A DNA stretch of 64,000 nt from the NCBI RefSeq assembly GCF_006345805.1, contig NC_043019.1, positions 4,215,360-4,279,359 on the forward strand. Reading direction: 5' to 3'. The position numbers were made by a program, and so were the translations under genes. Positions 843-44,705 of this stretch are shown piece by piece. The notes under the pieces were generated by a model, which was given only the letters and a program-made list of their open reading frames with translations, was not told the origin of the DNA and made no database searches. How positions within the stretch are numbered: position 1 is the first letter of the stretch; every line of letters begins with the position of its first letter. Source of the DNA: Octopus sinensis (taxonomy: Eukaryota).

Positions 843-1010
843 AGGCGCAGGAGTGGCTGTGTGGTAAATAGCTTGCTTACCAACCACATGGTTCCGAGTT
901 CATTCCCACTGCGTGGTACCTTGGGCAAGTGTCTTCTGCTATAGCCTCGGGCCGACCAAAGTCTTGTGAGTGGATTTGGTAGATGGAAACTGAAAGAAGC
1001 CCATCGTATA

Positions 1011-4121: not shown

Positions 4122-4301
4122 ATGGCAACACCATATCGATTACCGTCCAATTACATGAGACAGCAAGGCAATTCTGGCAGACACTTTGTTGGACGACATG
4201 ATGACAGGGAAAAACTGAAGATCTTGATCAAGGATGAAGATACTCAAATAATACAAATTTATGGACTGCCTTATGTTGGCAAAACAAGTCTTGTGAAAAC
4301 T
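4122..4301 (+). CDS. exon 1 (first visible coding exon): FVGR motif and Walker A
   Basis: Acceptor-like tttcag ends at 4120, ATG at 4122. Translates MATPYRLP...[12 protein letters not shown]...[18 protein letters not shown] (GxxxxGKT at 4263-4286). Donor gtaaga at 4302. Confidence 0.85.
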
Positions 4302-7300
4302 GTAAGAAATTTACTATTGTTTTCTCTTTTCTTTTTACGTTAACCTTATTGCATTTTGCCTTTCTGTAGGTTATTAGGGATCATTGAGGTTTTACAGTTA
4401 AGTTACTGACTAAAGAGAAAAGCATTTCTGGTTCAATCCCATACAATGGCAGTCACTGAAGTCTTTGTACCGTTTGGTGAGTTGGTGGTTGACCTATGAT
4501 CAAAGGTATTTCTCTTGTAACCATCCTGTCTATTTAAAGGTGTGAAAGACTACATTCTTGAATGTATCCTGTTCTATGTTATAAAAAAGAGGTGCAGTTT
4601 GAGAGAGATTTGACTGCTTTTTCTAGTAGATTGGCTTGACAGTGCAGGTTCTTGTTTGGCTGCAGGCTTGCCCTGATTGAGACTCAATGAAAGGCATTCT
4701 ATCTGTGCCTATAGATATATTATCATATCCACAGAATGTAGTAGGTGCTTTTAATGTGGGACAAGTGGGCGTTAAATGATGAAGATGACGATGAGTTAAA
4801 TAGCCAGAGAGATAAATGAAGTTATTGATGGGTAGAAGAATATATGTAGAGACTAGTTAATTGATAGACAGAGAATGAGAGAGGTAGGAGAAATAAGAGA
4901 TGGATAGTAAAAGAGATGAAGCAACTGTGTAATTAATAGAAAGATAATTAACGAGATTGAATGGCAAAGTGACAAACTGTTATCCAGAAAAATACTTAGA
5001 CAAACTGTAAGGTGAATATAAAGGAATATAAAGGATACCCTGAACTAATGCATAGATAAAAGAATAGACAAAGAGACAGTTATTGAGAGAGAATTATAAA
5101 GTCAGACAGAGAAAAAGACAAAGTGAGAGACCGATAAATTGATAAGTGAATCTATGGAAACCTTTGAACTTGTTCTAATGTTATGTTTCTAATATGACAG
5201 GTCTGTGAAGAATTGAAGGATGAAATCAACCCCGAAAGACTCCACATAAAACACATCCATATTTCTAATAATAGCAGTTGGTCTGATATTTCCAACATGT
5301 ACAATACATTCACCAATTGTTCCACTATCACCAACACGAAATGGAAAATTTGTATTTTTGATGATTTCCAGAACATTCAAGAAAGCTTCCTTCAAGGTTT
5401 CCAGGAGCTTTGTGACAATGACTTTCCACTGCACAGAAATCTAAAAATCATTCTCATATTAAGTAGTGGAGAACCATTTCAGTTTGATGGAATCAGGTTT
5501 GGAAAGTGTAAAGTGAGTCCATTGTCCATTAAAGATGCCCAGCTTCTTTTCGGTCGCTGTTCAGACATTGAGACGGATGATGAGAACAAAGAACAAATAC
5601 ACAACATCATCAGATATGCCTGTGGCCTGCCAGGACTTCTTATTTACTTTGCAGAAAAATTCTCCCAGTTTCATCATCATTTCTCTTTTGATGATATCTA
5701 CAAAATGATTTGTGATGAAACCAAGCTCAATGACTGGCTGGACGAATGTACAATTAACAGACGTAATATTAAGCAAGAAATGGACAAGTACTTTTCTCAA
5801 CTCTCTCACAAACAGCAAGAAGCTATCAAAGTGCTTTCATATTTTCCTGGAAGATTTGGTATTGAGGAAGCTGTTGAAATGACTGATTCTTCTAGTCAAC
5901 CAGCTTCAATGATACGTGTTCTGATGCCGCTTGTTGAACAAGGTTTGATCAGTTCAGATTTAGAATTACAGACTTTCCAAGTGCAACAGTTAGTACGTGT
6001 ACTTTCTATGCAACAGATAGACAATGTACACAGCAATGATTTGGTAAAGCTCAAATATACAAACATTATTGGGAAAAGTCTGATGAAGGCTCAAGATATT
6101 TATGATAAAGGCCTCATATATGAAGCGCTCGGAATAATGAACAACAACTGGGAAAATATTTCGTTTCTGATGAAGAAAGGGATTGATGCACCCTCTGATG
6201 GTAGGACATATGGAGTTTATTATGAGGTAAGATATTTTGTCCTTAACAACGTGTCTTGTATCTTGTGTTGTAAGTCAGTCTTTCATATGTCGCATTTTAG
6301 TTTAACCTGTGTTATATCTTCCCACATCTTTACCATTGGTTCTCAATTGAGGGCCATATGGCCCATGGGGGTCCATATAAGAGTCTGCTGTTGTTAAAAT
6401 ATATCAGCAAGAAATTGGTTATACTTCGACAATACACAAAATATTTCAACAATTTTTTAATACCATTCTTAATAATATTTAATTACAAAAATATATGATT
6501 CTTTTAAACATCGAATGTCTAGGATGGTCCAATAGAGTGGAATAGCAATGAAAGGGGTCTATAGGTAAAAAACGGTCGAGAAACCCTGCTGTAAGCTCGG
6601 CATAGGGTCTCTTCTGCCCCTTCTTACAAATCCTTTTTGGTTACATCTTATTCTGTCTTGTATTACTTTTATTTGGGGGTTTTTTTCTGTTACATCTTAA
6701 TCTGCACTCCGGCTACCTTGGACTAAGTGTCACTCAGAATATATTAGGTCAGACTCACTCCTAGTTCATCAAACTCAGTCTCTTAGACATTTTCAGTCTA
6801 TCCTACTTTCTGTTTCTGTCTGTTCAGATCTGAGTCTGACTCAGTATATCACGTATCAGACCTCATGTGGTTAGTTGATCCGAGACTCAGTATGATCCAA
6901 GATACACAATCCACTGTATTACATTGTACTTATCATCGCTAGTAAGACACCAAACTATGCTGTCTAGTAGTAGTAGTATTAGTTGTAGTAGCAGTGTTAA
7001 TAGTCCTGTAGTGATGGAACCACTAATTCTATTGAAGCAGGGACTAACCGAAAGACAACCTTAGAGAGTAGTATGGTATAACAGAGAGACATGGTATCAC
7101 AATAGCGTCTACTCTTTGTTTCAGTCATTTGACTGTGGCCATGCTGGAACACCGCCTTTAGTTGAGTAAATCAACCCAAGACTTAATCTTTGTAAACCTA
7201 GTATGTATTCTATCAGTCTCTTTTGCTGAACCGCTAAGTTACGGGGACGTAGACACACCATCAGTTGTCAAGCAATGTTGGGGGGACAAACACAGACACA

Positions 7301-8062: not shown

Positions 8063-8099
<37 letters not shown>

Positions 8100-11000
8100 G
8101 GAGGAGGAGGAGGAGGAAAATTATAATGACGATGATGAGTCAAATAGTGAGAGAGATAGAGGAAGTTATTGATGGCTAGAAGAACATGCATAGAGACCAG
8201 TTAATAGATAGGCAGAGAGTCAGAGAGCGAGAGATGAAATAAGAGATGGAGAGTAAAAGAGATAAAGAGACTGTGATTAATAGAAAGTTAAACAGCAGGA
8301 GTGGCTGTGTGGTAAGTAGTTTGTTTACCAGCCACATGGTTCCGGGTTCAGTCCCACTGCGTGGCACCTTGGGTAAGTGTCTTCTACTATAGCCTCGGAC
8401 CGACCAAAGCCTTGTGAGTGGATTTGGTAGACGGAAACTGAAAGAAGCCCATCGTATATATGTATATATGTATATGCGTGTGTGTGTTTGTGTGTCTGTG
8501 TTTGTCCCCCTAGCATTGCTTGACAACCGATGCTGGTGTGTTTATGTCCCCGTTACTTAGCGGTTCAGCAAAAGAGACCGATAGAATAAGTACTGGGCTT
8601 ACAAAGAATAAGTCCTGGGGTCGATTTGCTTGACTAAAGGCGGTGCTCCAGCATGGCCGCAGTCAAATGACTGAAACAAGTAAAAGAGAGAGAGAGAGAG
8701 ACAAATTGACAAACCTATCTTTCTAGAAAGATGCTTAGACAAATCGCTAGATGAATATAAAGGAAATTACTTAGATTGCTTAACGAATTTGTGTGTAAAT
8801 CAGTGAGGTCTGCAATGAGATGAGGCGAAATATTAAGTCAGCTGATAGTATTTAGTTACCTTTCTTTATGTTCTGGGTTCAATTCACACCACTGTCAACT
8901 TTACTGTTCATCCTTCTGGGTGAAGAACTCTTTTACTCACTGAACTCCATTCTGTCTTTTATTCTTCCTCGTCTGGCACCTGTGTCGGTGGCACATAAAA
9001 AAACACCATCCGAGCGTGGCCGTTCGCCAGCCTCGTCTGGCACCTGTGTCGGTGGCACATAAAAAACACCATCCGAGCATGGCCGTTCGCCAGCCTCGTC
9101 TGGCACCTGTGTTGGTGGCACATAAAAAACACCATCTGAGCGTGGCCGTTCGCCAGCCTTGTCTGGCACCTGTGTCGGTGGCACATAAAAAACACCATCC
9201 GAGCGTGGCTGTTCACCAGCCTCGTCTGGCACCTGTGTCGGTGGCACATAAAAAACACCATCCGAGCGTGGCCATTCGCCAGCTTTGTCTGGCACCTGTG
9301 TCGGTGGCACATAAAAAACACAATCCAAGCGTGGCCATTCGCCAGCCTCGTCTGGCACCTGTGTTGGTGGCACATAAAAAACACCATCCGAGCGTGGCCG
9401 TTCGCCAGCCTTGTCTGGCACCTGTGTCGGTGGCACATAAAAAACACCATCCGAGCGTGGCCGTTCGCCAGCCTCGTCTGGCACCTGTGTCGGTGGCACA
9501 TAAAAAACACCATCTGAGCGTGGCCGTTCGCCAGCCTCGTCTGGCACATAAAAAGCACCCACTACATTCACGGAGTGGTTGGCGTTAGGAAGGGCATCCA
9601 GCTGTAGAAACACTGCCAGATCAGACTGGGCCTGGTGCAGCCTTCTGGCTTCCCAGACCCCAGTTGAACCGTCCAACCCATGCTAGCATGGAAAGCGGAC
9701 GCTAAACGTTGATGATGATGATGATAATTCTTCCAGGAATCAGTTTAATATTCTTAGAATGTTTTGCACTATTTGTTTCCTGGCTCTTTTCATTCTTAGT
9801 TGAAATCTTCCAGAGGTCAACTTTGCTTTCCATTCTTTTGGAGCCTGATGAAATAAAGTACCAGTCAAGTACTGGGGGACTTATGATACTGACCAAACCC
9901 CTACACTCAAATTTGCTGACCTTGTGCTTAAGCCAGAAGCCGTGGTTTTTCCTACCAACTCTTTATGCTTTGAGTTCAATATTACAATCTATCCTTCCAA
10001 GTAAATTACTCATTTTAGTACTCTTTACTCCTTTTACTCTTTTACATGTTTCAGTCATTTGACTGCGGCCATGCTGGAGCACCGCCTTTAGTCGAGCAAA
10101 TCGACCCCGAGACTTATTCTTTGTAAGCCCAGTACTTATTCTATCGGCCGTCTCTTTTGCCGAACCGCTAAGTAACGGGGACATAAACACACCAGCATCG
10201 GTTGTCAAGCAATGCTAGGGGGACAAACACACACACATACATACATATACATGTATACATATATACGACAGGCTTCTTTCAGTTTCCGTCTACCAAATCC
10301 ACTCACAAGGCATTGGTCGGCCCGGGGCTATAGCAGAAGACACTTGCCCAAGATGCCACGCAGTGAGACTGAACCCGGAACCATGTGGTTGGTTAGAAAG
10401 CTACTTACCACACAGCCACTCCTGCGCCTACTTGTTACTTGTTTCTTTTTCTTTTTTTTTTTTCTTTCAGATAGCATTCAAAGCTTCCGATATGTTGATG
10501 ATATGCCACCCTAGAGATTCAAGACAGTTTTTCGAAGCCTGTCTACAAAACTCCCTGTTATTTGGCAATGAAGAAGAACAAGCTTTCATGAAGATAACAT
10601 ATGGTGTATCTTTGACAGATTTACCAGGTATGATATAATGTGGCAATCTTGGTTAGGATGAATGTTACTGTTATATAGCCCCAGGAAACATCGTCTCCAG
10701 CTGGCTATCAACATACTATCTATGTCCTTATATTTTCGAACAAGGATTTAGTGGCGCCATCTCTAGCCAAGCAGTTACTCTGTGCTGATGAAGGGAAGTA
10801 ACCCATGAACTATTGGTACCCAGATATTGCTCTGAGCTGAGTGGGGAGACTAAGCTCCCTTGTTCGAAAACATAAGGATGCAGATAGTGCATTTATAGCC
10901 AACTGGAGGCAATGTTTCCTGGGGCTAAATAACTGTAACATTGATGATGGTGAAGTTTCCTTATGCTGAATTGATGACGGTGAACTTTCCCTTCGGTGAA

Positions 11001-14000
11001 TTGATGACGATGACTTTCCCTTCAGTGAATTCATGACGGTGAATTTACCCTTCGGTGAATTGATGACGGTGAACTTTCCTTTCAGTAAATTGATGACAGT
11101 GACTTTCCCTTCAGTGAATTGATGACGGTGAATTTACCCTTCGGTGAATTGATGACGGTGAATTTACTCTTCGGTGAATTGATGACGGTGAACTTTTCCT
11201 TTCGCTGAATTGATGACGGTAACTTTCCCTTCAGTGAATTTACCCTTCGGTGAATTGATGACGGTGAACTTTCCCTTCGGTGAATTGATGACGGTAACTT
11301 TCCCTTCGGTGAATTGATGATGGTGAACTTTCCTTTCTGTAAATTGATGACAGTGACTTTCCCTTCAGTGAATTGATGACGGTGAATTTACCCTTCGGTG
11401 AATTGATGACAGTGAATTTACCCTTCGGTGAATTGATGACGGTGAATTGATGACGGTGAATTTACCCTTCGGTGAATTGATGACGGTGAATGTACCCTTC
11501 GGTGAATTGATGACGGTGAATTGATGACGGTGAATTTACCCTTCGGTGAATTGATGACAGTGAATTTACCCTTCGGTGAATTGATGACGGTGAATTTACC
11601 CTTCGGTGAATTGATGACAGTGAATTTACCCTTCGGTGAATTGATGACAGTGAATTTACCCTTCGGTGAATTGATGACAGTGAATTTACCCTTCGGTGAA
11701 TTGATGACAGTGAATTTACCCTTCGGTGAATTGATGACGGTGAACTTTCCCTTCGGTGAATTGATGACGGTGAATGTACCCTTCGGTGAATTGATGACAG
11801 TGAATTTACCCTTCGGTGAATTGATGACAGTGAATTTACCCTTCGGTGAATTGATGACGGTGAACTTTCCCTTCGGTGAATTGATGACGGTGAACTTTCC
11901 CTTCAGTGAATTGATGACAGTGAATTTACCCTTCGGTGAATTGATGACGGTGAATTTACCCTTCGGTGAATTGATGACGGTGAATTTACCCTTCGGTGAA
12001 TTGATGACGGTGAACTTTCCCTTCGGTGAATTGATGACAGTGAATTTACCCTTCGGTGAATTGATGACGGTGAATTGATGACGGTGAATTTACCCTTCGG
12101 TGAATTGATGACGGTGAATTGATGACGGTGAATTTACCCTTCGGTGAATTGATGACGGTGAATTTACTCTTCGGTGAATTGATGACGGTGAACTTTTCCT
12201 TCGCTGAATTGATGACGGTAACTTTCCCTTCAGTGAATTTACCCTTCGGTGAATTGATGACGGTGAACTTTCCCTTCGGTGAATTGATGACGGTAATTTC
12301 CCTTCGGTGAATTGATGACGGTGAACTTTCCTTTCTGTAATTGATGACAGTGACTTTCCCTTCAGTGAATTGATGACGGTGAATTTACCCTTCGGTGAAT
12401 TGATGACAGTGAATTTACCCTTCGGTGAATTGATGACGGTGAATTGATGACGTGAATTACCCTTCGGTGAATTGATGACGGTGAATGTACCCTTCGGTGA
12501 ATTGATGACGGTGATTGATGACGTGAATTCCCCTTCGGTGAATTGATGACAGTGAATTTACCCTTCGGTGAATTGATGACGGTGAATTTACCCTTCGGTG
12601 AATTGATGACAGTGAATTTACCCTTCGGTGAATTGATGACAGTGAATTTACCCTTCGGTGAATTGATGACGGTGAACTTTCCCTTCGGTGAATTGATGAC
12701 AGTGAATTTACCCTTCGGTGAATTGATGACAGTGAATTTACCCTTCGGTGAATTGATGACAGTGAATTTACCCTTCGGTGAATTGATGACAGTGAATTTA
12801 CCCTTCGGTGAATTGATGACAGTGAATTTACCCTTCGGTGAATTGATGACAGTGAATTTACCCTTCGGTGAATTGATGACGGTGAATTTACCCTTCGGTG
12901 AATTGATGACAGTGAATTTACCCTTCGGTGAATTGATGACGGTGAATTTACCCTTCGGTGAATTGATGACAGTGAATTTACCCTTCGGTGAATTGATGAC
13001 AGTGAATTTACCCTTCGGTGAATTGATGACAGTGAATTTACCCTTCGGTGAATTGATGACGGTGAATTTACCCTTCGGTGAATTATGACAGTAATTTACC
13101 CTTACCCTTCGAATTGATGACAGTGAATACCCCTTCGGTGAATTGATGACAAGTGAATTTACCCTTCGGTGAATTGATGACAGTGAATTTACCCTTCGGT
13201 GATTGAACGGTGAATTTACCCTCGGTGAATTGATGACAGTGAATTTACCCTTCGGTGAATTGATGACAGTGAACTTTCCCTTCAGTGAATTGATGACGGT
13301 GAACTTTCCTTTCAGTAAATTGATGACAGTGAACTTTCCTTTCAGTGAATTGATGACGGTGAACTTTCCTTTCAGTGAATTGATGACGGTGAACTTATTC
13401 TTCAGTGAATTGATGACGGTGAACTTTCCCTGCAGTCAATTGACGGCAGTAAACTTACTGGACATGGTTATAGACTATTTACCATTTCTGTGGTTCCTCC
13501 GTCTCCCCTTTTGATGTCCTAAGCATTTGCTTATTTTGCTTAATGGTTAATCCAACCTAATGGTTAATCTACAACTGTGCAACTATATCTGTTCTCTTGT
13601 GTTTGCAACAGATTGCTGTTTTCACTGAAATTTTCCACTAGTATATTTTGTTTTTAAATTTGTAGATACTTCCTAATTCTAGTTCTTGTGTACTTTTGGT
13701 ATAGCTGTCAGGACAATCCTTCCTCTATATAGTATTGTAAACCTTACATTGAGTTGAAGTTTTTGTGAAGGATCTTGCTGTTGTCATTGTAGATGTTACT
13801 ATTACTTTGGGCATCATTATGACACAAAATATTTTCTTGGGTTTTCCACAGGTTATGGAGGATACAAAGAAGCCATGGTGTACTACAAGAAGGCCATGGA
13901 TGTATTGAAATCTAGAAACATCCAGTACCGACAGATGCTGCTGTACAATAGCATGGCTTACAATGCCTATATGCGGGGCAATTATGTGGAAGCCTTGAAG

Positions 14001-15665: not shown

Positions 15666-15707
<42 letters not shown>

Positions 15708-17153: not shown

Positions 17154-17198
<45 letters not shown>

Positions 17199-27077: not shown

Positions 27078-27109
<32 letters not shown>

Positions 27110-27393: not shown

Positions 27394-27443
<50 letters not shown>

Positions 27444-36400: not shown

Positions 36401-39400
36401 CCCTACCACCACCACTACCACCACCACACCATCATCATTGTCACTATCACCATTGCCACAATCACCACCAGCACCATCACCCCTACCACCACCACTACCA
36501 CCATCATCATTGTCACTATCACCATTGCCACAATCACCACCAGCACCATCACCCCTACCACCACCACTACCACCATCATCATTGTCACTATCACCATTGC
36601 CACAATCACCACCACACCATCACCTCTACCACCACCACTACCACCATCATCATTGTCACTATCACACAACCCAATTCACATCACCACCAGCACCATCACC
36701 CCTACCACCACCACTACCACCATCATCATTGTCACTATCACCATTGCCACAATCACCACCAGCACCACACCACCATCACCCCTACCCCACCACTACCACC
36801 ATCATCATTGTCACTATCACCATTGCCACAATCACCACCAGCACCATCACCCCACCACCACCACTACCACCATCATCATTGTCACTATCACCATTGCCAC
36901 AATCACACCACCAGCACCATCACCCCTACCACCACCAACTACCACCATCATCATTGTCACTATCACCATTGCCACAATCACCACCAGCACCATCACCCCT
37001 ACCACCACCACTACCACCATCATCATTGTCACTATCACCATTGCCACAATCACCACCAGCCGCACACCATCACCCCCCTACCAACCACCACTACCACCAT
37101 CATCATTGTCACTATCACCATTGCACAATCACCACCAGCACCATCACCCCTACCACCACCACTACCACCATCATCATTGTCACTATCACCATTGCCACAA
37201 TCACCACCAGCACCATCACCTCTACCACCACCACTACCACCATATCATCATTGTCACTATCACCAATTCCACAATCACCACCAGCACCATCACACCCATA
37301 CACCACCACTACCACCATCATCATTGTCACTATCACCATTGCCACAATCACCACCAGCACCATCACCCCTACCACCACCACTACCACCATCATCATTGTC
37401 ACTATCACCAATTCCACAATCACCACCAGCAACCATCACCTCTACCACCACCACTACCACCATCATCATTGTCACTATCACCATTGCCACAATCACCACC
37501 AGCACCATCACCCTACCACCACCCACTACCACCATCATCATTGTCACTATCACCATTGCCACAATCACCACCAGCACCATCACCCCTACCACCACCACTA
37601 CACCATCATCATTGTCACTATCCACCATTGCCACAATCACCACCAGCACCATCACCCCTACCACCACCACTACCACCATCATCATTGTCACTATCACCAT
37701 TGCCACAATCACCACCAGCACCATCACCCCTACCACCACCAATACCACCATCATCATTGTCACTATCACCATTGCCACAATCACCACCAGCACCATCACC
37801 CCTACCACCAATCATCATTGTCACTATCACCATTAACAACCACACCCAGCACCATCACCCCTACCACCACCACTACCACCATCATCATTGTCACTATCAC
37901 CATTGCCACAATCACCACCAGCACCATCACCCCTACCACCACCACTACCACCATCATCATTGTCACTATCACCATTGCCACAATCACCACCAGCACCATC
38001 ACCCCTACCAACACCACTACCACCATCATCATTGTCACTATCACCATTACCACAATCACCACCAGCACCATCACCCCTACCACCACACCACTACCACCAT
38101 CATCATTGTCACTATCACCAATTCCACAATCACCACCAGCACCATCACCTCTACCACCACCACTACCACCATCATCATTGTCACTATCACATTGCCACAA
38201 TCACCACCAGCACCATCACCCCTACCACCACCACTACCACCATATCATTGTCACTATCACCATTGCCACAATCACCACCAGCACCATCACCCCTACCACC
38301 ACCACTACCACCATCATCATTGTCACTATCACCATTGCCACAATCACCACCAGCACCATCACCCCTACCACCATCATCATTGTCACTATCACCATTACCA
38401 CAATCACCACCAGCACCATCACCCCTACCACCACCACTACCACCATCATCATTGTCACTATCACCATTGCCACAATCACCACCAGCACCATCACCCCTAC
38501 CACCACCACTACCACCATCATCATTGTCACTATCACCATTGCCACAATCACCACCAGCACCATCACCCCTACCACCACCACTACCACCATCATCATTGTC
38601 ACTATCACCATTGCCACAATCACCACCAGCACCATCACCCCTACCACCACCACTACCACCATCATCATTGTCACTATCACCATTGCCACAATCACCACCA
38701 GCACCATCACCCCTACCACACCACTACCACCATCATCATTGTCACTATCACCATTGCCACAATCACCACCAGCACCATCACATCTACCCACCACCACCAC
38801 TACCACCATCATCATTGTCACTATCACCATTGCCACAATCACCACCAGCACCATCACCCCACCACCACCACTACCACCATCATATTGTCACTATCACCAT
38901 GCCACAATCACCACCAACCAGCAACCATCACCTCTACCACCACCACTACCACCATCATCATTGTCACTCACCATTGCCACAATCACCACCAGCACCATCA
39001 CCCCTACCACCACCACTACCACCATCATCATTGTCACTATCACAATTGCCACAATCACCACCAGACACCATCACCCTACCACCACCACTACCACCATCAT
39101 CATTGTCACTATCACCATTGCCACAATCACCACCAGCACCCTCACCCCTACACCACCACTAACCACCATCAATCATTGTCACTATCACCATTGCCACAAT
39201 CACACACACCAGCACATCACCACCCACCACACTAACCAACCCATCATCATTGTCACTATCACCATTGCCACAATCACCACCAGCACCATCACACCCTACC
39301 ACCACCACTACCACCATCATCATTGTCACTATCACCATTGCCACAATCACCACCAGCACCATCACCCCTACCACAACCACTACCACCATCATCATTGTCA

Positions 39401-42400
39401 CTATCACCAATTCCACAATCACCACCAGCACATCACCTCTACCACCACCACTACCACCATCATCATTGTCACTATCACCATTGCCACAATCACAACCAGC
39501 ACCATCACCCCTACCACCACACTACCACCATCATCATTGTCACTATCACCAATTCCACAATCAACACCAGCACCATCACCTCTACCACCACCACTACCAC
39601 CATCATCATTGCACTATCACCATTGCCACAATCACCACCAGCACCATCACCCTACCACCACCACTACCACCATCATCATTGTCACTATCACCAATTCACA
39701 ATCACCACCAGCAACATCACCTCTACCACCACCACTACCACCATCATCATTGTCACTATCACCATTGCCACAATCACCACCAGCACCATCACCTCTACCA
39801 CCACCACTACCACCATCATCATTGTCACTATCACCATTGCCACAATCACCACCAGCACCATCACCCCTACCACCACCACTACCACCATCATCATTGTCAC
39901 TATCACCATTGCCACAATCACCACCAGCACCATCACCCCTACCACCACCACTACCACCATCATCATTGTCACTATCACCATTGCCACAATCACCACCAGC
40001 ACCATCACCCCTACCACCACACTACCACCATCATCATTGTCACTATCACCATTGCCACAATCACCACCAGCACCATCACCCCTACCACCACCACTACCAC
40101 CATCATCATTGTCACTATCACCATTGCCACAATCACCACCAGCACCATCACCCCCTACCCCACCACTACCACCATCATCATTGTCACTATCACCATTACC
40201 ACAATCACCACCAGCACCATCACCCCTACCACCACCACTACCACCATCATCATTGTCCTATCACCATTGCCACAATCACCCAGACCATCAACCTACCACC
40301 ACCACTACCACCATCATCATTGTCACTATCACCAATTGCCACAATCACCACCAGCACCATCACCCCCTACCACCACCACTACCACCATCATCATTGTCAC
40401 TATCACCATTGCCACAATCACCACCAGCACCATCACCCCTACCACCACCACTACCACCATCATCATTGTCCACTATCACCATTACCACAATCACCACCAG
40501 CACCATCACCCCTACCACCACCACTACCACCATCATCATTGTCACTATCACCATTGCCACAATCACCACCAGCACCATCACCCCTACCACCACCACTACC
40601 ACCATCATCATTGTCACTATCACAATTCCACAATCCCACCAGCACCATCACCCTACCACCACCCACTACCACCATCCATCATTGTCACATCACCATTGCC
40701 ACAATCACCACCAGCACATCACCCCCTACCACCACCACTACCACCATCATCATTGTCACTATCACCATTGCCACAATCACCACCAGCACCATCACTCTAC
40801 CACCACCACTACCACCATCATCATTGTCACTATCACCAATTCCACAATCACCACCAGCACCATCAACCCCTACCACCACCACTACCACCATCATCATTGT
40901 CACTATCACCATTGCCACAATCACCACCAGCACCATCACCCCTACCACCACCACTACCACCATCATCATTGTCACTATCACCAATTCACAATCACCACCA
41001 GCACCATCACCCCTACCACCACCACTACCACCATCATCATTGTCACTATCACCATTGCCACAATCACCACCAGCACCATCACCCCTACCACCACCACTAC
41101 CACCATCATCATTGTCACTATCACCATTGCCACAATCACCACCAGCACCATCACCCTACCACCCACCACTACCACCATCATCATTGTCACTATCACCATG
41201 GCCACAATCACCACCAGCACCATCACCCCTACACCACCACTACCACCATCATCATTGTCACTATCACCATTGCCACAATCACCACCAGCACCATCACCCC
41301 TACCACCACACACCACCATCATCATTGTCACTATCACCATTGCACAATCACCACACAGCACCATCACCCCTACCACACCACTACCACCATCATCATTGTC
41401 ACTATCACCATTGCCACAATCACCACCAGCACCATCACCCCTACCACCACCACTACCACCATCATCATTGTCACTATCACCAATTCCACAATCACCACCA
41501 GCACCATCACCCCTACCACCACCACTACCACCATCATCATTGTCACTATCACCAATTCCACAATCACCACCAGCACCATCACCCCTACCCACCACACTAC
41601 CACCATCATCATTTCACTATCACCATTGCAACAACAATCAACCACCCAGCAACCATCCACCCCTACCACCACCACTACCACCATCATCATTGTCACTATC
41701 ACCAATTCCACAATCACACCAGCACCATCACCCTTACCACCACCACTAACCACCCATCACATTGTCACTATCACCAATTCCACAATCACCACCAGCACCA
41801 TCACCCCTACCACACACCACTAACACCATCATCATTGTCACTATCACCAATTCCACAATCACCACCAGCACCATCACCCCTACCACCACCACTACCACCA
41901 TCATCATTGTCACTATCACCATTACCACAATCACCACCAGCAACCATCACCACTGCCTCTTCTGACTGAATTTCGCCACGGAAACACCCCCTACCATCTT
42001 CTTATTTCCAGGTGTGAAATCTCCGACTGTCTGACAACATTGCACGAGGCTTTGGCCATCTACGACCACATAGACCCAAACTACATCGGAAAGATCAAGG
42101 TCCTGCAACTGATTGCTCACTGCTATCTGCTGAACGAGGAATTTGACAATGCCAAGAAGTATTTCAAGAACATATCGGAAGTTAATAGTGACAACTTTTT
42201 GAGCAGCGTGTCAGAGGTTGAAGTCTTCTCAATGGCTTTGGAACACCTGGTTTATCTCAGTTTGGAAGATCCACAGGTATGAGTAATTAATAGCTTGTTG
42301 CTGATGTCATTGATAGAGATTAATTAGTTTGATGAAAAATAGGATTGATTGAAATATAAATGGTACATGAACATATAGGCGCAGGAGTGGCTGTGTGGTA

Positions 42401-42770
42401 AGTAGCTTGTTTACTAACCACATGGTCCCGGGTTCAGTCCCACTGCGTGGCACCTTGGGCAAGTGTCTTCTACTATAGCCTCGGGCCGACCAAAGCCTTG
42501 TGAGTGGATTTGGTAGATGGAAACCGAAAGAAGCCCGTCGTATATATGTATATATATATATATGTGTGTGTGTTTGTCTCCCTAGCATTGCTTGACAACC
42601 GATGCTGGTGTGTTTATATTCCCGTCACTTAGCGGTTCGGCAAAAGAGACCGATAGAATAAGTACTGGGCTTACAAAAATGAGTAAGTTCCGGGGTTGAG
42701 TTGCTCGATTAAAGGCGGTGCTCCAGCATGGCCACAGTCAAATGACTGAAACAAGTAAAAGAGTATATTA

Positions 42771-42801
<31 letters not shown>

Positions 42802-44705
42802 TGGTTTCAAATTCTGGTTCAAGGCCAGCAATTTTTGGAAAGTCAATTACTTTGACCCCAGTGCGCAGGACGTAGCAGGAGCCCCAACCAACATGACCAA
42901 TGTGGGTCAAAGGCAGGGTGAAAAAGAATGACACTGCCTTCACAGGACACTGGTCACGTGGTAGGGTAGAAGAAGTATATATAGAGAAAAAGAATAGGAT
43001 ATGGAGAGAGAGGAGGAAGGGGCAATCATCAGTAAATCATAAATCTCAAAGGGAAGCAGAGTAATTAGTTAAAGAGTAGCAGAGTAATTAGATAAATATG
43101 GTTATGGCTGGTCTGTGGAGTTTCCCTGGGTTTCATGTCCACAAAGTGCTTAGCTTTATGGTGTTTCTTCAGACCCTAATGACTGGTGGTCTGTAATCTC
43201 TCTGCAAAGTGGAGGGAGAAGAGACCTCATTATATATTTCTTTACTACCCACAAGGGGCTAAACATAGAGGGGACAAACAAGGACAGACAAAGAGATTAA
43301 GTCGATTACATCGACCCCAGTGCGTAACTGGTACTTAATTTATCGACCCCGAAAGGATGAAAGGCAAAGTTAACCTCGGCGGAATTTGAACTCGGAACGT
43401 AATGACAGACGAAATACGGCTACGCATTTTGCCCAGCGTGCTAACGTTTCTGCCAGCTCACCGCCATAATATGAAAGAATATGGCCAGTATGGGGCACGA
43501 AAGTGACCTCATTATAGGCCACCAACCATTAGGGTCTGAAGATATACCATATCTTTATCCAATATATATGTATATAAAATAAATAATAATGAAATTATTG
43601 TATGCAGTGCTCAGGTGCACCACAACTTGTCAGACAGTGCGTATAAAGTATGTGCAATAATGTACAAATGCTGGGAAAGCGAACAGTGTATGAGTCAGAT
43701 ACATGCTTGCGTGTGTATGGAGGGGAGAAAATCAGATGTAGTGTTGGCGAATCTCAGGAATAATAATAATGAAATTATTGTATACAGTGCTCAGGTACAC
43801 CACAACTTGTCAAAAGTGCGTATAAAGTATATGCAGTAATGTACAAATGTCTGGAAAGCGAACAGTGTATGAGTCAGATACATGCTTGCGTGTGTATGGA
43901 GGGGAGAAAGTCAGGTGTAGTGTTGGCGAATCTCAGGAATCATGGAAGTTTTGAAGGATGCAGTACTCCAACAACTAATAACCGATGCCGGCAGTTTGTT
44001 CCATGCTTCAGCAACTCTTAGCGTGGAAAAATGTTTCCGAAAGTCATGGGAGCTGTGCTGTTTTCTGACTTTGTAAACATTTCCACAGGTGTTAGATGGA
44101 GTTTGGAATGGTGCTCAGAGTTATAGTTTGTAAGATGGTTAATATATGTTTAAGTACCTGGTTTCTGTGATGTTTAAGTGACTCAGATCACAACATACCT
44201 TTTGAATGGGACATCAGTCCATTGCAGGGTTATACTTTTACAGCCACATGGACTGAGTCAACTTGGAATGAAATGTTAGACATAGCCTTGCGATTGTGAG
44301 TGGAACACCTTGACCACTAAGCCATATGTCTTAGCGCATGCACACACTGTTTAATTCTTAATTTCTTTCTTTTTTTATTTCTAGAACCAGCTGATTCATA
44401 TCGAGAATATTTTGAACCATCTAAGACAACTATATAAACGAAGTGTAAATGAGAAACAGAAGCTACGATATTTCAATGCTATTGGCAAGTACCAGTCCTT
44501 GAAAATACTCCTGGTAGATAGACTCAACCAAAATGAAGAACGGGCTGGACTCCTCATGGACTCAGTCCCGGTTCTTTGTAATTATTGTAAGACCTTCAGG
44601 CAGTATTTTAATTGCACTCAAGAGAATTATATTCATAAACTCTGCGGATTAAGATCTAATTTATTTGAAGTCGAATTTCAACAACAATTAAAGATTGTAG
44701 AATAA
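4122..44705 (+). CDS. 10-exon gene: NB-ARC-like STAND NTPase + winged helix + TPR repeats (NLR-like, ~856 aa)
   Basis: join(4122-4301,5201-6226,10471-10627,13852-13999,15711-15820,17548-17655,24012-24155,24264-24375,42012-42276,44385-44705) = 2571 nt = 857 codons with no internal stop. All introns are GT..AG with phases 0,0,1,2,1,1,1,2,0. Domain calls come from motif recognition, not an HMM search. Confidence 0.85.
5201..6226 (+). CDS. exon 2: Walker B, helical domain (GLP motif), winged helix
   Basis: Acceptor gacag at 5200. Motifs: KICIFDDF (5345-5368), [13 protein letters not shown] (RNBS-C-like), CGLPGLL (5621), [23 protein letters not shown]. Donor gtaaga at 6227. Confidence 0.92.
7110..7500 (-). 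mobile_element. SINE family A
   Basis: Reverse complement of the family A head, body and tail. Confidence 0.8.
7810..8100 (+). mobile_element. family E retroposon with (GAT)n tail
   Basis: CCAACCCATGCTAGCATGGAAAACGGACGCTAAATGATGA.. 3' end. Confidence 0.7.
8295..8688 (+). mobile_element. SINE family A
   Basis: Full head, microsatellite and tail. Confidence 0.8.
8967..9547 (+). repeat. 63-bp tandem repeat (~9 copies) inside a family E element (8967-9725)
   Basis: Unit CCTCGTCTGGCACCTGTGTCGGTGGCACATAAAAAACACCATCCGAGCGTGGCCGTTCGCCAG, with starts at 9031 and 9094. Confidence 0.9.
10018..10429 (-). mobile_element. SINE family A
   Basis: Full reverse copy ending about 40 bp upstream of the exon 3 acceptor. 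Confidence 0.8.
10471..10627 (+). CDS. exon 3: helical region leading into the TPRs
   Basis: Long polypyrimidine tract + cag at 10470. Translates [28 protein letters not shown]...TDLP. Donor gtatga at 10628. Confidence 0.85.
10941..13460. repeat. 30-bp minisatellite (~84 copies) in intron 3
   Basis: Unit GGTGAATTGATGACRGTGAATTTACCCTTC. It produces the [10 protein letters not shown] ORFs. Confidence 0.95.
13852..13999 (+). CDS. exon 4: TPR
   Basis: Acceptor ttttccacag at 13851. Translates [19 protein letters not shown]...[18 protein letters not shown] (TPR-like). Donor gtatgt at 14000. Confidence 0.85.
14148..14299. mobile_element. truncated copy of the piggyBac-like MITE
   Basis: Matches the right-hand 150 bp of 14390-14610. 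Confidence 0.65.
14390..14610. mobile_element. piggyBac-like MITE
   Basis: TTAA at 14386-14389 and 14611-14614; termini CCCTTT...AAAGGG. Confidence 0.75.
15068..15669 (+). mobile_element. 5'-truncated non-LTR retrotransposon, restriction-like endonuclease end (R4/Dong-like)
   Basis: YIHRHDRVV...[22 protein letters not shown]...*FLIDVSIP...KLSKYKDL...PIIVGALG with two in-frame stops; (TAA)n on both sides. Confidence 0.85.
15711..15820 (+). CDS. exon 5: TPR
   Basis: Only the TAG at 15708-15710 gives the required phase 2, yielding [41 protein letters not shown]. Donor gtaata at 15821. The acceptor context is unusual (TAA repeat). Confidence 0.7.
16043..16430 (+). mobile_element. SINE family A
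   Basis: Full copy. Confidence 0.8.
16586..17147 (-). mobile_element. internally deleted mariner element
   Basis: TIRs TTGGGTTGTCCGGAAAGTTCGTGCCGATT / AATCGGCACAAACTTTCCAATCAACGCAA with TA on both sides. The minus strand encodes [24 protein letters not shown]. Confidence 0.9.
17548..17655 (+). CDS. exon 6: TPR
   Basis: Acceptor tttgcag at 17547. Translates [36 protein letters not shown], matching the HPxxAxxLNxxG pattern of long TPRs. Donor gtaagt at 17656. Confidence 0.88.
17692..18025 (-). mobile_element. degraded SINE family A
   Basis: Tail and partial head recognisable; noisy. Confidence 0.6.
18170..18365. mobile_element. fold-back / MITE-like element
   Basis: ~85-bp inverted arms (18170-18255 / 18282-18365) with TA on both sides. 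Confidence 0.7.
19040..19450 (+). mobile_element. family E retroposon with (GAT)n tail
   Basis: Three internal GGCATGTAAAAAGCACC units; tail at 19423-19450. Confidence 0.7.
19695..20004 (+). mobile_element. tRNA-derived SINE family C
   Basis: Head GGAGGCGCAATGGCCCAGTGGTTAGG, B-box GGTTTCGATTCCC, GCGATGGACTGGCATCCCGTCCAG domain; ~15-bp TSD tttttcacac(g/a)gtgt. Confidence 0.8.
20184..20609 (-). mobile_element. SINE family A
   Basis: Full reverse copy inside the hAT MITE. Confidence 0.8.
20731..21046 (-). mobile_element. SINE family C
   Basis: Perfect 15-bp TSD caataaataccaata at 20716-20730 and 21047-21061. Confidence 0.85.
21611..22150 (-). mobile_element. RTE-type LINE 3' fragment
   Basis: [18 protein letters not shown]...[10 protein letters not shown]...VWRSMV followed by a (TGA)n tail. 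These are RTE-clade C-terminal motifs. Confidence 0.8.
23240..23789. repeat. 88-bp tandem repeat (6 full copies + partial), family E-derived
   Basis: Unit starts at 23240, 23328, 23416, 23504, 23591, 23679, 23767. Confidence 0.9.
24012..24155 (+). CDS. exon 7: TPR
   Basis: Acceptor tttcaatag at 24011. Translates [23 protein letters not shown]...[16 protein letters not shown]. Donor gtacgt at 24156. Confidence 0.82.
24264..24375 (+). CDS. exon 8: TPR
   Basis: Acceptor ttttttccag at 24263. Translates [37 protein letters not shown]. Donor gtaagt at 24376. Confidence 0.85.
24388..24812. mobile_element. MITE with GGATCTTT termini and 8-bp TSD
   Basis: TIRs GGATCTTTTCGGTTTGAACGGCAGTTTTT / AAAAACTGCCATTCAAACCGAAAAGATCC; TSD gtactttt at 24380-24387 and 24813-24820. 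Confidence 0.85.
25068..25410 (+). mobile_element. tRNA-derived SINE family D
   Basis: TGGCTCAGTGGTTAGAGCG A-box, GAGTTCGAATCCC B-box, TTGAGCAAGACACTT central domain. Confidence 0.7.
25506..25940 (-). mobile_element. family E retroposon
   Basis: (CAT)n followed by CGTTTAACGTCCGCTTTTCATGCTAGCATGGG. Confidence 0.7.
27452..27673 (+). mobile_element. small cassette with 26-bp inverted termini and a degenerate hammerhead core
   Basis: Perfect IR 27452-27477 / 27648-27673 in (TA)n. Core CTGAAGA-ATCTAC-TAGA-GTAGAT-GCAA at 27553-27579. Confidence 0.55.
27716..27975 (-). mobile_element. family E retroposon
   Basis: (CAT)n tail and conserved body. Confidence 0.7.
28316..41953. repeat. 72-bp CA-rich satellite (~190 copies, 13.6 kb) in intron 8
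   Basis: Unit ACCACCACCACTACCACCATCATCATTGTCACTATCACCATTGCCACAATCACCACCAGCACCATCACCCCT; period checked at 30481 and 30553. Confidence 0.97.
42012..42276 (+). CDS. exon 9: TPR
   Basis: Acceptor tatttccag at 42011. Translates [19 protein letters not shown]...[21 protein letters not shown]...EDPQ. Donor gtatga at 42277. Confidence 0.88.
42377..42764 (+). mobile_element. SINE family A
   Basis: Full copy. Confidence 0.8.
43235..43465 (-). mobile_element. SINE family B
   Basis: Full reverse copy. Confidence 0.8.
43582..44090 (-). mobile_element. CR1-type LINE 3' end with a tandemly duplicated 180-bp terminus
   Basis: Minus strand encodes [30 protein letters not shown] and ends in a (TTA)n tail. 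Repeat units start at 43582 and 43762. Confidence 0.7.
44385..44705 (+). CDS. exon 10: C-terminal helical region and stop
   Basis: Polypyrimidine tract + ctag at 44384. Translates [17 protein letters not shown]...QQQLKIVE*, in phase 0 with exon 9. Confidence 0.8.
   Translation, partial: NQLIHIENILNHLRQLYKRSVNEKQKLRYFNAIGKYQSLKILLVDRLNQNEERAGLLMDSVPVLCNYCKTFRQYFNCTQENYIHKLCGLRSNLFEVEFQQQLKIVE

What the first reader, a model, noticed from the sequence alone, without database searches (positions are those of the whole stretch)
4122..44705. Hidden 10-exon NLR-like gene: NB-ARC-type STAND NTPase fused to TPR repeats
Seen: exons scattered over 40 kb join through canonical splice sites into one stop-free 856-aa frame; the ORF track shows only pieces of it. 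It carries FVGR, Walker A (GLPYVGKT), Walker B (ICIFDD), an RNBS-C-like segment, CGLPGLL, a winged helix, then several TPR-like units ([54 protein letters not shown]). Established: NB-ARC + TPR is a receptor architecture of fungal NLRs and prokaryotic STAND sensors, distinct from Apaf-1 (CARD-NB-ARC-WD40) and vertebrate NACHT-LRR NLRs. Inference: a candidate cephalopod intracellular sensor or oligomerising switch that I cannot assign to a named orthologue.
Basis: partly seen in the sequence, partly recalled or inferred. Interest (0 to 1): 0.85.

Follow-up and report, generated by a model that had tools for sequence, protein, structure and literature searches.

The report
Octopus NB-ARC-like TPR switch gene
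This is a real 10-exon octopus gene, already listed in public annotation as an uncharacterised protein; it encodes a nucleotide-driven switch with a TPR sensor arm, belongs to a tandem array of about ten copies, and has the build of an innate-immune-type receptor, but no function has been shown.

Summary
Ten + strand exons (4122-44705) join through one unique GT-AG solution into an 856-aa frame. That frame is 100% identical to the NCBI protein 'uncharacterized protein LOC115223561 isoform X1' of Octopus sinensis.

Domain assignment:
- Only TPR_12 passes its Pfam cut-off. NB-ARC scores 19-22 bits against a cut-off of 23.5.
- A profile of the N-terminal 400 aa finds molluscan and hemichordate relatives (E 1e-18 to 1e-29), and several of these do pass the NB-ARC cut-off.
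- A wider family profile hits plant NLRs, PH0952, AfsR and Apaf-1 in the PDB (E 1e-16 to 1e-9).
- Confident AlphaFold models (pLDDT about 85) match PH0952 over the whole length and CED-4, Apaf-1 and resistosomes for the nucleotide-binding module. No NACHT protein appears among the top matches.

Family context:
- The gene is one of about ten tandem paralogues in 455 kb, some with a disrupted exon 2.
- The NTPase exons are nearly identical between copies, while the TPR exons have diverged.
- No effector domain is present, the MHD histidine is glutamine, and the sensor-1 arginine is missing.

Verdict: a new member of a known kind, an animal NB-ARC-like/TPR STAND protein. An immune-sensor role is plausible but untested.

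The parts
4122..4301 (+). Coding exon 1 (aa 1-60). It holds a disordered 21-aa N-terminus, the hhGR motif FVGR (4185-4196) and the Walker A motif GLPYVGKT (4263-4286). An acceptor-like 'tttcag' lies directly before the ATG, which suggests a further 5' UTR exon upstream (inference).
   Evidence: pLDDT below 50 for aa 3-19
5201..6226 (+). Coding exon 2 (aa 61-402): the rest of the nucleotide-binding domain, helical domain 1, the winged helix and the start of the arm. Walker B ICIFDD is at 5348-5365. The beta-4 strand IILILSSG at 5447-5470 has no sensor-1 Arg. [14 protein letters not shown] is at 5510-5551, the GLPL-like CGLPGLL at 5621-5641, the winged helix at 5807-6022, and the MHD-position FQVQQLVR at 5975-5998, with Gln in place of His.
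10471..10627 (+). Coding exon 3 (aa 403-454): helical arm/HD2-like region linking the NOD to the TPR array.
13852..13999 (+). Coding exon 4 (aa 455-503): first TPR-like hairpins ([10 protein letters not shown]).
15711..15820 (+). Coding exon 5 (aa 504-540): TPR-like helices.
17548..17655 (+). Coding exon 6 (aa 541-576): TPR-like helices ([12 protein letters not shown]).
24012..24155 (+). Coding exon 7 (aa 577-624): TPR-like helices ([10 protein letters not shown]).
24264..24375 (+). Coding exon 8 (aa 625-661): TPR-like helices ([15 protein letters not shown]). The Pfam TPR_12 match (aa 651-714) starts here.
42012..42276 (+). Coding exon 9 (aa 662-750): TPR units, including the only above-threshold Pfam match (TPR_12, 44.8 bits against a cut-off of 30.1). 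This is the exon that differs most between paralogues.
44385..44705 (+). Coding exon 10 (aa 751-856 plus TAA): the last helical hairpin and a C-terminal tail with a conserved CxxC. It matches no known domain.
28355..41951 (+). A 13.6-kb satellite of about 189 units of 72 bp fills most of intron 8 and ends 60 bp before exon 9. It is part of the gene's anatomy but is not coding.

Best explanation
The locus is the Octopus sinensis gene LOC115223561. It encodes a cytosolic STAND-class P-loop NTPase whose nucleotide-binding oligomerisation module (NBD, helical domain 1, winged helix) is a strongly diverged NB-ARC-like module. A helical arm and about eight TPR-type hairpins follow. No N-terminal effector domain is present. 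SHOWN: the gene model, the domain order, the fold, the family relationships and the tandem array. INFERRED, from what is established for STAND proteins with TPR sensors (PH0952 and MalT, PMC6468293) and for Apaf-1, CED-4 and plant NLRs: in the resting state the protein is a monomer holding ADP, kept closed by contacts of the arm and TPR array with the NBD. A ligand, protein or peptide, binding the TPR surface releases these contacts. Nucleotide exchange then opens the NOD, and the open form multimerises into a hub. Because no death-fold, TIR or other effector domain is present, the output most likely runs through recruitment of partner proteins by the oligomer or by the unassigned C-terminal tail. 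The family shape fits a lineage-specific receptor repertoire (about ten tandem copies, some with a disrupted exon 2, near-identical NOD exons, diverged TPR exons), most plausibly for non-self or danger sensing. That last step is the weakest.
For: Gene model: a unique GT-AG solution that is 100% identical to the annotated 856-aa protein, with all junctions gap-free against a homologue encoded as one uninterrupted ORF on a transcript-like contig. STAND/NB-ARC side: the motif order is hhGRxxE, GxPxxGKT, hhhhDD, PL, GLPG(L), LSxFPGxF, then the MHD position. The N-terminal profile finds 1137 proteins at E<=1e-3 and 56 at E<=1e-10, aligned over positions of about 15-400. Of 52 such relatives, 36 match Pfam NB-ARC (best 7.5e-20) and 41 match TPR_12. 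Molluscan relatives pass the NB-ARC cut-off (43.8, 37.2, 36.1, 32.3 and 26.1 bits against 23.5). The wider family profile hits ADR2 2.3e-16, Sr35 2e-15, PH0952 4.5e-14, ZAR1 1e-12, AfsR 1.9e-11 and Apaf-1 1.6e-9 over profile positions 10-353. Fold: the full-length AF2 model has pLDDT 85.4 and pTM 0.75, and its best PDB match is PH0952 (STAND with TPR sensor, E 7e-11, 800 aligned columns), followed by NRC3, CED-4 and Apaf-1. The N-terminal model (pLDDT 85.9, pTM 0.81) matches CED-4 best (E 1.8e-8, TM 0.5-0.6, rmsd 4.4-5.5), then a wheat resistosome, the Apaf-1 apoptosome, ZAR1, NRC and MalT, with no NACHT protein in the top 50. Repertoire: about ten exon-2 copies lie on C23 between 3.886 and 4.340 Mb, on both strands, and four of them are split by frame breaks. 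Paralogue identity is 88-95% in exons 1-2 and 56-72% in exons 5-9. dS is 0.06-0.14 in exon 2 against 0.32-0.49 in exon 9, and dN/dS is about 0.4 against 0.4-0.8. The cephalopod clade is monophyletic (100/100), and the O. sinensis copies form a shallow terminal cluster.
Against: The protein itself is below every Pfam NTPase cut-off, and the cephalopod-only profile gives only insignificant RFC hits in the PDB. The choice between the NB-ARC and MalT-like clades of STAND is therefore not settled. No effector domain was found in this protein or in its closest relatives. The histidine of the MHD motif is Gln across the cephalopod clade, and the Arg of the TTR/TSR (sensor-1) position is absent, so the nucleotide cycle may be altered or hydrolysis lost. 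dN/dS stays below 1 on short exons, so positive selection on the TPRs is not shown. I have no expression, localisation, ligand or infection data, and no paper in the searched library names these loci. The frame breaks in paralogues could be long-read assembly errors.
Confidence: 0.62

Rival explanations
1. The protein is a STAND-type scaffold or regulator with a non-immune cellular role, for example a TPR adaptor in trafficking, cilia or proteostasis, as is assumed for nephrocystin-3. On this reading the tandem copies reflect the general habit of octopus genomes to amplify gene families, not receptor diversification.
For: No death-fold, TIR or other immune effector domain is present. One relative is auto-named 'nephrocystin-3-like', and there are weak NPHP3_N and TPR_NPHP3 hits. 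dN/dS is below 1 in all exons tested. The TPR part resembles general adaptors such as APPBP2, LGN, OGT and APC subunits.
Against: The NPHP3_N matches are below cut-off (15.8-19.2 bits against 24.8), and the TPR_NPHP3 matches are far below theirs (at most 61 bits against 100). The family is multi-copy and lineage-specific, with probable pseudogenes, unlike a conserved single-copy housekeeping gene. The NOD matches the Apaf-1/CED-4/plant-NLR/PH0952 group.
Confidence: 0.22
2. The protein is a degenerate STAND that no longer cycles nucleotide and acts only as a TPR-mediated binding protein, decoy or regulator of other family members.
For: Across the cephalopod clade the MHD position has Gln in place of His, the sensor-1 Arg of TTR/TSR is missing, and GLPL has become GLPG. 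The clade sits on a long stem branch (1.02 changes per site), and its NOD is too diverged for the Pfam cut-offs.
Against: Walker A GKT and Walker B DD are intact in all cephalopod members. The NOD exons are the best conserved parts among the Octopus paralogues, with dN/dS of about 0.4. The NOD is modelled with high confidence as a complete NBD-HD1-WHD unit.
Confidence: 0.12
3. The 856-aa frame is an annotation artefact, or the gene is no longer expressed.
For: I could not inspect RNA-seq for this locus. Several neighbouring paralogues show frame breaks.
Against: The frame is 2571 nt without a stop across ten exons, with one unique canonical splice solution. It is colinear end to end with homologues from Argonauta, cuttlefish and a transcript-like contig. 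Purifying selection acts on the NOD exon.
Confidence: 0.04

Closest known systems
PH0952 of Pyrococcus horikoshii (PDB 6MFV) and MalT: STAND ATPases with a TPR sensor
   Same: The overall build is the same: NOD (NBD, helical domain, winged helix), then an arm, then a TPR sensor. PH0952 is the best whole-length structural match (E 7e-11 over 800 columns) and a significant profile hit (4.5e-14). The autoinhibition and activation scheme described for these proteins (PMC6468293) is the model I borrow.
   Different: They are archaeal and bacterial, and MalT carries a DNA-binding effector. Sequence identity is about 13-14%. The whole-chain TM-score is low (0.28-0.35, rmsd 25), so the relative placement of the domains differs or is not fixed in the model. 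The octopus protein has no effector domain and has Gln at the MHD position.
Apaf-1 / CED-4 (animal NB-ARC, AP-ATPase clade)
   Same: The NBD-HD1-WHD module matches best. CED-4 gives E 1.8e-8, TM 0.5-0.6 and rmsd 4.4-5.5. Apaf-1 gives 1.6e-9 with the family profile over positions 10-353. The Walker B is of the hhhhDD type, and a GLPL-like motif and a winged helix are present.
   Different: There is no CARD, and the sensor is TPR, not WD40 (Apaf-1) or absent (CED-4). It is not an orthologue: it belongs to a mollusc-wide clade of NOD-TPR proteins and is multi-copy.
Plant NLRs (ZAR1, Sr35, NRC, ADR2, MLA13)
   Same: These are the highest-scoring PDB sequences for the family profile (2.3e-16 to 1e-12) and strong structural matches for the NOD. 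They share tandem arrays with a conserved NOD and variable repeat domains.
   Different: Their sensor is LRR, not TPR, and they carry CC or TIR effector domains. They keep the canonical TTR and MHD motifs.
Fungal and bacterial NB-ARC-TPR proteins (fungal NLRs; AfsR/SARP regulators)
   Same: The NOD-repeat pairing is the same: in fungi NB-ARC is preferentially followed by TPR (PMC4986451). AfsR is a significant hit (1.9e-11), and 7 of 52 relatives carry a BTAD domain.
   Different: Those proteins carry N-terminal effector or DNA-binding domains (HET, HeLo, patatin, prion-forming motifs, BTAD), and the octopus protein has none. Fungal TPR arrays are highly regular, recombining repeats. Here the TPR units are degenerate, and only one stretch passes Pfam.
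Molluscan and hemichordate NOD-TPR proteins (Solemya, Pecten, Patella, Haliotis, Pinctada, Mercenaria 'nephrocystin-3-like', Glandiceps)
   Same: These are the true nearest relatives: same length class (about 730-900 aa, some longer), same NOD-arm-TPR order, E 1e-18 to 1e-29 with the cephalopod N-terminal profile. The clade containing Solemya, Pecten, Haliotis and Patella is sister to the cephalopod clade (100/99).
   Different: Identity is only about 18-21%. Most keep His at the MHD position (RFDIHGILR), and several pass the Pfam NB-ARC cut-off, which the cephalopod proteins do not. None has a studied function.

Membership tests
STAND class P-loop NTPases (Leipe, Koonin and Aravind 2004) | P-loop NTPase core with Walker A GxxxxGK[ST] and Walker B hhhhD[DE] | tested here: met
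   GLPYVGKT (aa 48-55) and ICIFDD (aa 110-115) are conserved across the clade. The model shows a five-strand alpha/beta core.
STAND class P-loop NTPases (Leipe, Koonin and Aravind 2004) | A helical domain and a winged-helix domain directly after the NTPase core (NBD-HD1-WHD, the NOD) | tested here: met
   In the AF2 model, helices 170-242 are followed by H263-272, H281-288, H294-306, the hairpin E310-313/E318-321 and H323-334, at pLDDT of about 84-92. The module superposes on CED-4, Apaf-1 and NLR NODs.
STAND class P-loop NTPases (Leipe, Koonin and Aravind 2004) | C-terminal superstructure-forming repeats that act as the sensor | tested here: met
   TPR_12 scores 44.8 bits (cut-off 30.1). The model shows about 17 paired helices between aa 455 and 798, with TPR-protein matches.
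STAND class P-loop NTPases (Leipe, Koonin and Aravind 2004) | Nucleotide-dependent switch and oligomerisation | not testable with these tools
   This needs biochemistry: nucleotide binding and size-exclusion or cryo-EM with ATP analogues.
NB-ARC / AP-ATPase clade (Pfam PF00931) | Score at or above the Pfam gathering threshold (23.5 bits) | tested here: not met
   The score is 21.7 bits for exons 1-2 alone and 19.0 bits for the full length, and only profile positions 10-78 of 248 are matched. Other cephalopod members score 15-18 bits.
NB-ARC / AP-ATPase clade (Pfam PF00931) | Homology to bona fide NB-ARC proteins through significant intermediates | tested here: met
   The cephalopod profile reaches molluscan relatives at 1e-18 to 1e-29, and these pass the NB-ARC cut-off at up to 43.8 bits. 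The joint profile reaches plant NLRs, AfsR and Apaf-1 at 2e-16 to 2e-9.
NB-ARC / AP-ATPase clade (Pfam PF00931) | Motif set: hhhhDD Walker B, RNBS-B hhhTTR/TSR (sensor-1 Arg), GLPL, MHD | tested here: inconclusive
   DD is present, and GLPL is present as GLPG-L. RNBS-B is ILILSSG, without Arg. The MHD position reads VQQ (Gln for His), whereas relatives read IHG/IHE.
NB-ARC / AP-ATPase clade (Pfam PF00931) | Fold closer to NB-ARC proteins than to NACHT proteins | tested here: met
   The top 50 Foldseek matches of the NOD model include CED-4, Apaf-1, ZAR1, Sr35, NRC, a wheat resistosome, MalT and PAB2304, and no NACHT protein. MalT-like proteins also score, so the choice between NB-ARC and the MalT clade is not resolved.
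NACHT clade (Pfam PF05729) | Significant match to the NACHT profile, or NACHT-type Walker B (hhhhDGhDE) | tested here: not met
   P0001 gives no NACHT hit at E<=0.1. The Walker B is FDDF. NACHT hits occur in only 18 of 52 distant relatives and are weaker than their NB-ARC hits.
Bona fide animal NLR (NACHT + LRR; Ting et al. 2008, as used in PMC3879445) | NACHT domain plus C-terminal LRRs, usually with a death-fold effector | tested here: not met
   No NACHT, LRR, CARD, PYD, DEATH or TIR match was found. The protein is NLR-like in logic only.
Nephrocystin-3 (NPHP3) family | NPHP3_N P-loop domain and NPHP3-type TPR domain above cut-off, in a conserved orthologue | tested here: not met
   NPHP3_N scores 15.8-19.2 bits (cut-off 24.8), and TPR_NPHP3 is absent in P0001 and at most 61 bits (cut-off 100) in relatives. 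The family is a multi-copy, lineage-specific array.

The most novel reading that the evidence does not exclude
Cephalopods, which are poor in classical NACHT-LRR receptors, may use this tandem array of effector-less NB-ARC-like/TPR proteins as a lineage-specific intracellular recognition repertoire. Under this reading the NOD exons are kept uniform by gene conversion while the TPR exons diversify. Signalling would run through an output not yet described (the unassigned C-terminal tail, or partner recruitment by the oligomer), with a modified nucleotide latch (Gln at the MHD position, no sensor-1 Arg).
Probability: 0.25. Interest if true: 0.7.

Novelty: new member of a known kind. Interest (0 to 1): 0.42.

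Why it matters
Intracellular immune sensing in cephalopods is almost unexplored, and surveys that rely on Pfam cut-offs would miss this family because its NTPase domain scores below threshold. If these proteins are receptors, three things follow:
- They would add an animal example of the NB-ARC/TPR design otherwise studied in fungi, bacteria and archaea.
- They would show how a STAND protein signals without a death-fold or TIR domain.
- They would offer a tractable case of mosaic evolution, with a homogenised switch module next to diverging sensor exons.

If they are not receptors, the result is still useful. It gives a verified gene model, a domain assignment for a set of 'uncharacterized LOC' genes, and a profile that retrieves the family across molluscs.

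Tried and rejected
- **Direct Pfam assignment.** Only TPR_12 passes its cut-off. ATPase_2, AAA_16, NB-ARC, NPHP3_N and nSTAND6 are all below theirs, so none was used as a label on its own.
- **Cephalopod-only profile against the PDB.** Nothing was significant; the best hits were RFC subunits at E 0.037. I rejected a clamp-loader reading because the match covers only the P-loop to Walker B stretch, and the wider profile and the fold point to STAND.
- **PADLOC and NCBIfam.** These gave only weak P-loop or TPR matches far below cut-off, so no link to a named bacterial defence system was drawn.
- **C-terminal tail.** It has no Pfam match even at E 10. A zinc-binding reading of CxxC...HxxC was dropped because only the CxxC is conserved.
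- **N-terminal 21 aa as a short signalling or amyloid motif.** Rejected: it is not conserved outside Octopus and is modelled as disordered.
- **Effector domains in longer relatives.** None was found.
- **Other genes or RNAs in the window.** No Rfam family, no tRNA, and no other credible coding frame were found, only repeat and transposon fragments.
- **Literature.** No paper names these loci. A search for 'nephrocystin-3' in oyster infection studies gave nothing usable.
- **Positive selection.** dN/dS stayed below 1 on the exons tested, so I make no claim of positive selection.

Full report

Stop-to-stop frames around them and the splice-site sequences gave eight obvious coding blocks, whose phases showed that two exons were missing.

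A search with the draft protein found an 856-aa NCBI protein, 'uncharacterized protein LOC115223561 isoform X1 [Octopus sinensis]' (P0001). Every residue of it maps to the window in ten blocks.

An exhaustive search of GT/GC donors and AG acceptors within 8 nt of the block ends gave exactly one solution. The exons are:

| Exon | Window coordinates |
|---|---|
| 1 | 4122-4301 |
| 2 | 5201-6226 |
| 3 | 10471-10627 |
| 4 | 13852-13999 |
| 5 | 15711-15820 |
| 6 | 17548-17655 |
| 7 | 24012-24155 |
| 8 | 24264-24375 |
| 9 | 42012-42276 |
| 10 | 44385-44705 |

This totals 2571 nt, or 856 codons plus TAA. All donors are GT, and all acceptors follow pyrimidine tracts.

Independent support for the junctions comes from P0017, a 33-38% identical homologue. 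It is encoded as one uninterrupted ORF on a 2882-nt contig assembled from run SRR29271463, a size that fits an mRNA. All nine junctions lie in gap-free, conserved stretches of the alignment with it.

I could not inspect RNA-seq of this locus. The gene is not hidden from public annotation; it is annotated but unnamed.

**2. What does it encode?**

On the protein itself only TPR_12 passes its Pfam cut-off (44.8 against 30.1 bits, aa 651-714). ATPase_2, AAA_16, AAA_14, NB-ARC (19.0-21.7 against 23.5, covering only profile positions 10-78), NPHP3_N and nSTAND6 all stay below threshold. A profile of cephalopod N-terminal regions alone finds nothing significant in the PDB; the best hits are RFC subunits at E 0.037. 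By direct sequence tests, then, the NTPase is an unassigned P-loop domain.

The link to known families comes through intermediates:
- The same cephalopod profile (401 positions) scanned against 1.84 billion representative proteins gives 1137 hits at E<=1e-3 and 56 at E<=1e-10. Most align over positions of about 15-400, that is the whole module and not just the P-loop.
- The nearest non-cephalopod hits are 'uncharacterized' proteins of bivalves (Solemya, Pecten, Ylistrum, Potamilus, Mercenaria, Pinctada, Mizuhopecten, Saccostrea), gastropods (Patella, Haliotis) and a hemichordate (Glandiceps).
- Of 52 such relatives, 36 match Pfam NB-ARC (best 7.5e-20), 41 match TPR_12, 18 match NACHT more weakly, and 7 match BTAD.
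- Five of the ten closest relatives checked individually pass the NB-ARC cut-off (43.8, 37.2, 36.1, 32.3 and 26.1 bits).
- A profile joining cephalopod, molluscan and a few more distant members hits the following in the PDB: ADR2 (2.3e-16), Sr35, MLA13, PH0952 (4.5e-14), NRC1-4, ZAR1 (1e-12), Roq1, AfsR (1.9e-11) and Apaf-1 (1.6e-9, profile positions 10-353). ORC/Cdc6 proteins follow well behind, and no NACHT protein is listed.

The motif order, read from an HMM alignment, is:

| Motif | Octopus sequence | Residues |
|---|---|---|
| hhGRxxE | FVGRHDDRE | starts at aa 22 |
| Walker A | GLPYVGKT | 48-55 |
| Walker B | ICIFDD | 110-115 |
| PL motif | [14 protein letters not shown] | 164-177 |
| GLPL-like | CGLPGLL | 201-207 |
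| LSxFPGxF | LSYFPGRF | 272-279 |
| WH motif | [11 protein letters not shown] | 301-311 |
| MHD position | FQVQQLVR | 319-326 |

**3. Fold**

AlphaFold2 on a 24-sequence alignment gave a confident full-length model (mean pLDDT 85.4, pTM 0.75). It has:
- a disordered N-terminus (aa 3-19);
- a five-strand alpha/beta core;
- a helical domain;
- a winged helix (helices 263-272, 281-288 and 294-306, hairpin 310-321, helix 323-334);
- a helical arm (aa 340-452);
- about 17 paired helices up to aa 798;
- a short C-terminal tail.

Its best PDB match is 6MFV, PH0952 of Pyrococcus horikoshii, described by its authors as the first structure of a STAND with a TPR sensor (PMC6468293). The match has E 7e-11 over 800 columns. 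NRC3, CED-4 and Apaf-1 follow for the N-terminal half, and APPBP2, OGT, LGN and APC subunits for the TPR half.

A separate model of aa 1-457 (pLDDT 85.9, pTM 0.81) matches CED-4 best (E 1.8e-8, TM 0.5-0.6, rmsd 4.4-5.5). A wheat resistosome, the active Apaf-1 apoptosome, PAB2304, MalT, ZAR1, NRC and Sr35 come next. No NACHT protein is in the top 50.

Sequence transitivity and fold thus agree: this is a STAND NOD on the NB-ARC/MalT side of the class, fused to a TPR sensor. NB-ARC in the strict Pfam sense is not met by the protein itself, and NB-ARC against the MalT-like clade is not resolved.

**4. What is unusual in it?**

- There is no effector domain. Only 21 disordered, poorly conserved residues precede the NOD. 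The last 58-106 residues match no Pfam family. The closest relatives also show only NOD plus TPR.
- The whole cephalopod clade has Gln where relatives and classical NB-ARC proteins have the MHD histidine. Compare [16 protein letters not shown] and FQVQPLIR with RFDIHGILR.
- The TTR/TSR motif after beta-4 is ILILSSG, without the sensor-1 arginine.
- GLPL reads GLPG.
- Walker A and B are intact.

These changes suggest an altered nucleotide latch. I did not test this.

**5. Family and genomic setting**

The window is C23:4215360-4279359 of a 2.72-Gb assembly. Six-frame search with the protein finds exon-2 copies on C23 at about 3.908, 3.956, 3.980, 4.014, 4.047, 4.111, 4.145, 4.170, 4.220 (this gene) and 4.300 Mb. 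They lie on both strands, with matching exon-1, exon-9 and exon-10 hits.

That makes about ten genes in 455 kb. Further copies sit on three unplaced contigs, and two distant paralogues (27-28% identity) lie elsewhere. In four C23 copies exon 2 is split into pieces in different frames, which indicates either probable pseudogenes or assembly errors.

Among O. sinensis paralogues, protein identity is 88-95% in exons 1-2 but 56-72% in exons 5-9. Nei-Gojobori estimates from genomic exons are:

| Exon | dS | dN/dS |
|---|---|---|
| 2 | 0.06-0.14 | about 0.4 |
| 9 | 0.32-0.49 | 0.4-0.8 |
| 10 | 0.12-0.21 | 0.35-1.0 |

The several-fold lower dS of the NOD exon points to gene conversion or very recent exchange of that exon. 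The TPR exons are older and more diverged. Positive selection is not demonstrated.

In a maximum-likelihood tree of NOD modules, the cephalopod sequences form one clade (100/100) on a long stem. That clade is sister (100/99) to one holding Solemya, Pecten, Haliotis and Patella proteins. The O. sinensis and O. vulgaris copies form a shallow terminal cluster.

The window contains no other credible gene, Rfam family or tRNA.

**6. Mechanism**

Shown: gene model, architecture, fold, relatives, array.

Inferred from established STAND biology (PMC6468293 for TPR-sensor STANDs; Apaf-1, CED-4 and plant NLRs from my own knowledge):
- The resting form is an ADP-bound monomer closed by arm/TPR contacts with the NBD.
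- Ligand binding on the TPR array releases autoinhibition.
- Nucleotide exchange follows, and the open form oligomerises.
- With no effector domain, output must depend on partners recruited by the oligomer or by the tail.

The array structure fits a receptor repertoire, which makes a defence or non-self sensing role the most plausible. I put about 0.6 on 'functional STAND switch with a sensing role' and much less on any specific ligand or pathway.

Rivals are a non-immune TPR scaffold (0.22), a nucleotide-dead binding protein or decoy (0.12) and a non-expressed model (0.04).

**7. Novelty**

NB-ARC or NACHT domains joined to TPR repeats in invertebrates have been noted in surveys (PMC3879445, PMC9646362, PMC4986451), and the gene model is in RefSeq. 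What is new here is:
- the assignment of this set of 'uncharacterized LOC' genes to the NB-ARC-like/TPR STAND group, although they score below threshold;
- the definition of a cephalopod clade within a mollusc-wide family;
- the tandem array with a homogenised NOD exon;
- the lack of an effector domain and the altered MHD and sensor-1 positions.

This is a new member of a known kind, of moderate interest. No paper in the searched library names these loci.

Noticed in passing
window 28355-41951 (intron 8): A 13.6-kb satellite of about 189 copies of a 72-bp unit (89% matches), extremely strand-asymmetric (C 6355, A 4268, T 2459, G 515; GC skew about -0.8). It is open in all three + frames for thousands of codons (His/Pro/Thr/Ser-rich) and ends 60 bp before exon 9. 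Related arrays (about 75% identity) lie on many chromosomes, and one lies directly beside exon 9 of the paralogue at C23:3888043-3888426, so the insertion predates at least that duplication.
   Followed up: partly
window 10940-13458 (intron 3): A 30-bp minisatellite of about 85 copies in three adjoining arrays (84-89% matches). It gives long repetitive open frames on both strands that are not coding.
   Followed up: no
window 8967-9547; 23240-23798; 1704-2077; 47495-49269; 43582-43940; 59605-60357: Further tandem arrays: a 63-bp unit x9, an 88-bp unit x6.4 (99% matches), a 184-bp unit x2 and x9.7 (possibly the same family upstream and downstream of the gene), a 179-bp unit x2, and a 750-bp (AT)n tract.
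   Followed up: no
window 893-928, 1118-1153, 7415-7450, 8341-8376, 10344-10379, 16093-16128, 20524-20559, 42427-42462, 50019-50054, 52789-52824, 61459-61494: Eleven copies, on both strands, of one interspersed repeat recognisable by the pseudo-translation [12 protein letters not shown](TMWLV...). It is probably a SINE. ARAGORN and Rfam call no tRNA in the window.
   Followed up: partly
window 45285-45443 (+), 55367-55921 (-), 21627-22331 (-), 14942-15292 (+): Transposon debris: a mariner-type transposase C-terminal fragment (HPPYSPD..PSDYHLF) just downstream of the gene, and reverse-transcriptase or LINE fragments in introns and downstream.
   Followed up: no
G000:C23 3.886-4.340 Mb (loci L001-L039): Among the tandem paralogues, synonymous divergence of the NOD exon (dS 0.06-0.14) is several-fold lower than that of the TPR exon 9 (0.32-0.49). 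This suggests gene conversion confined to exons 1-2. Four copies have frame breaks in exon 2.
   Followed up: partly
P0005 (O. vulgaris model, 837 aa), N-terminal 94 aa: One public gene model of a paralogue carries a reverse-transcriptase-like N-terminal extension and lacks exons 4-5. It looks like an annotation fusion with a neighbouring retroelement, not a real domain.
   Followed up: no
window 4115-4121: An acceptor-like 'catatttcag' sits one base before the start codon, which suggests an unannotated or unseen 5' UTR exon upstream of 4122.
   Followed up: no
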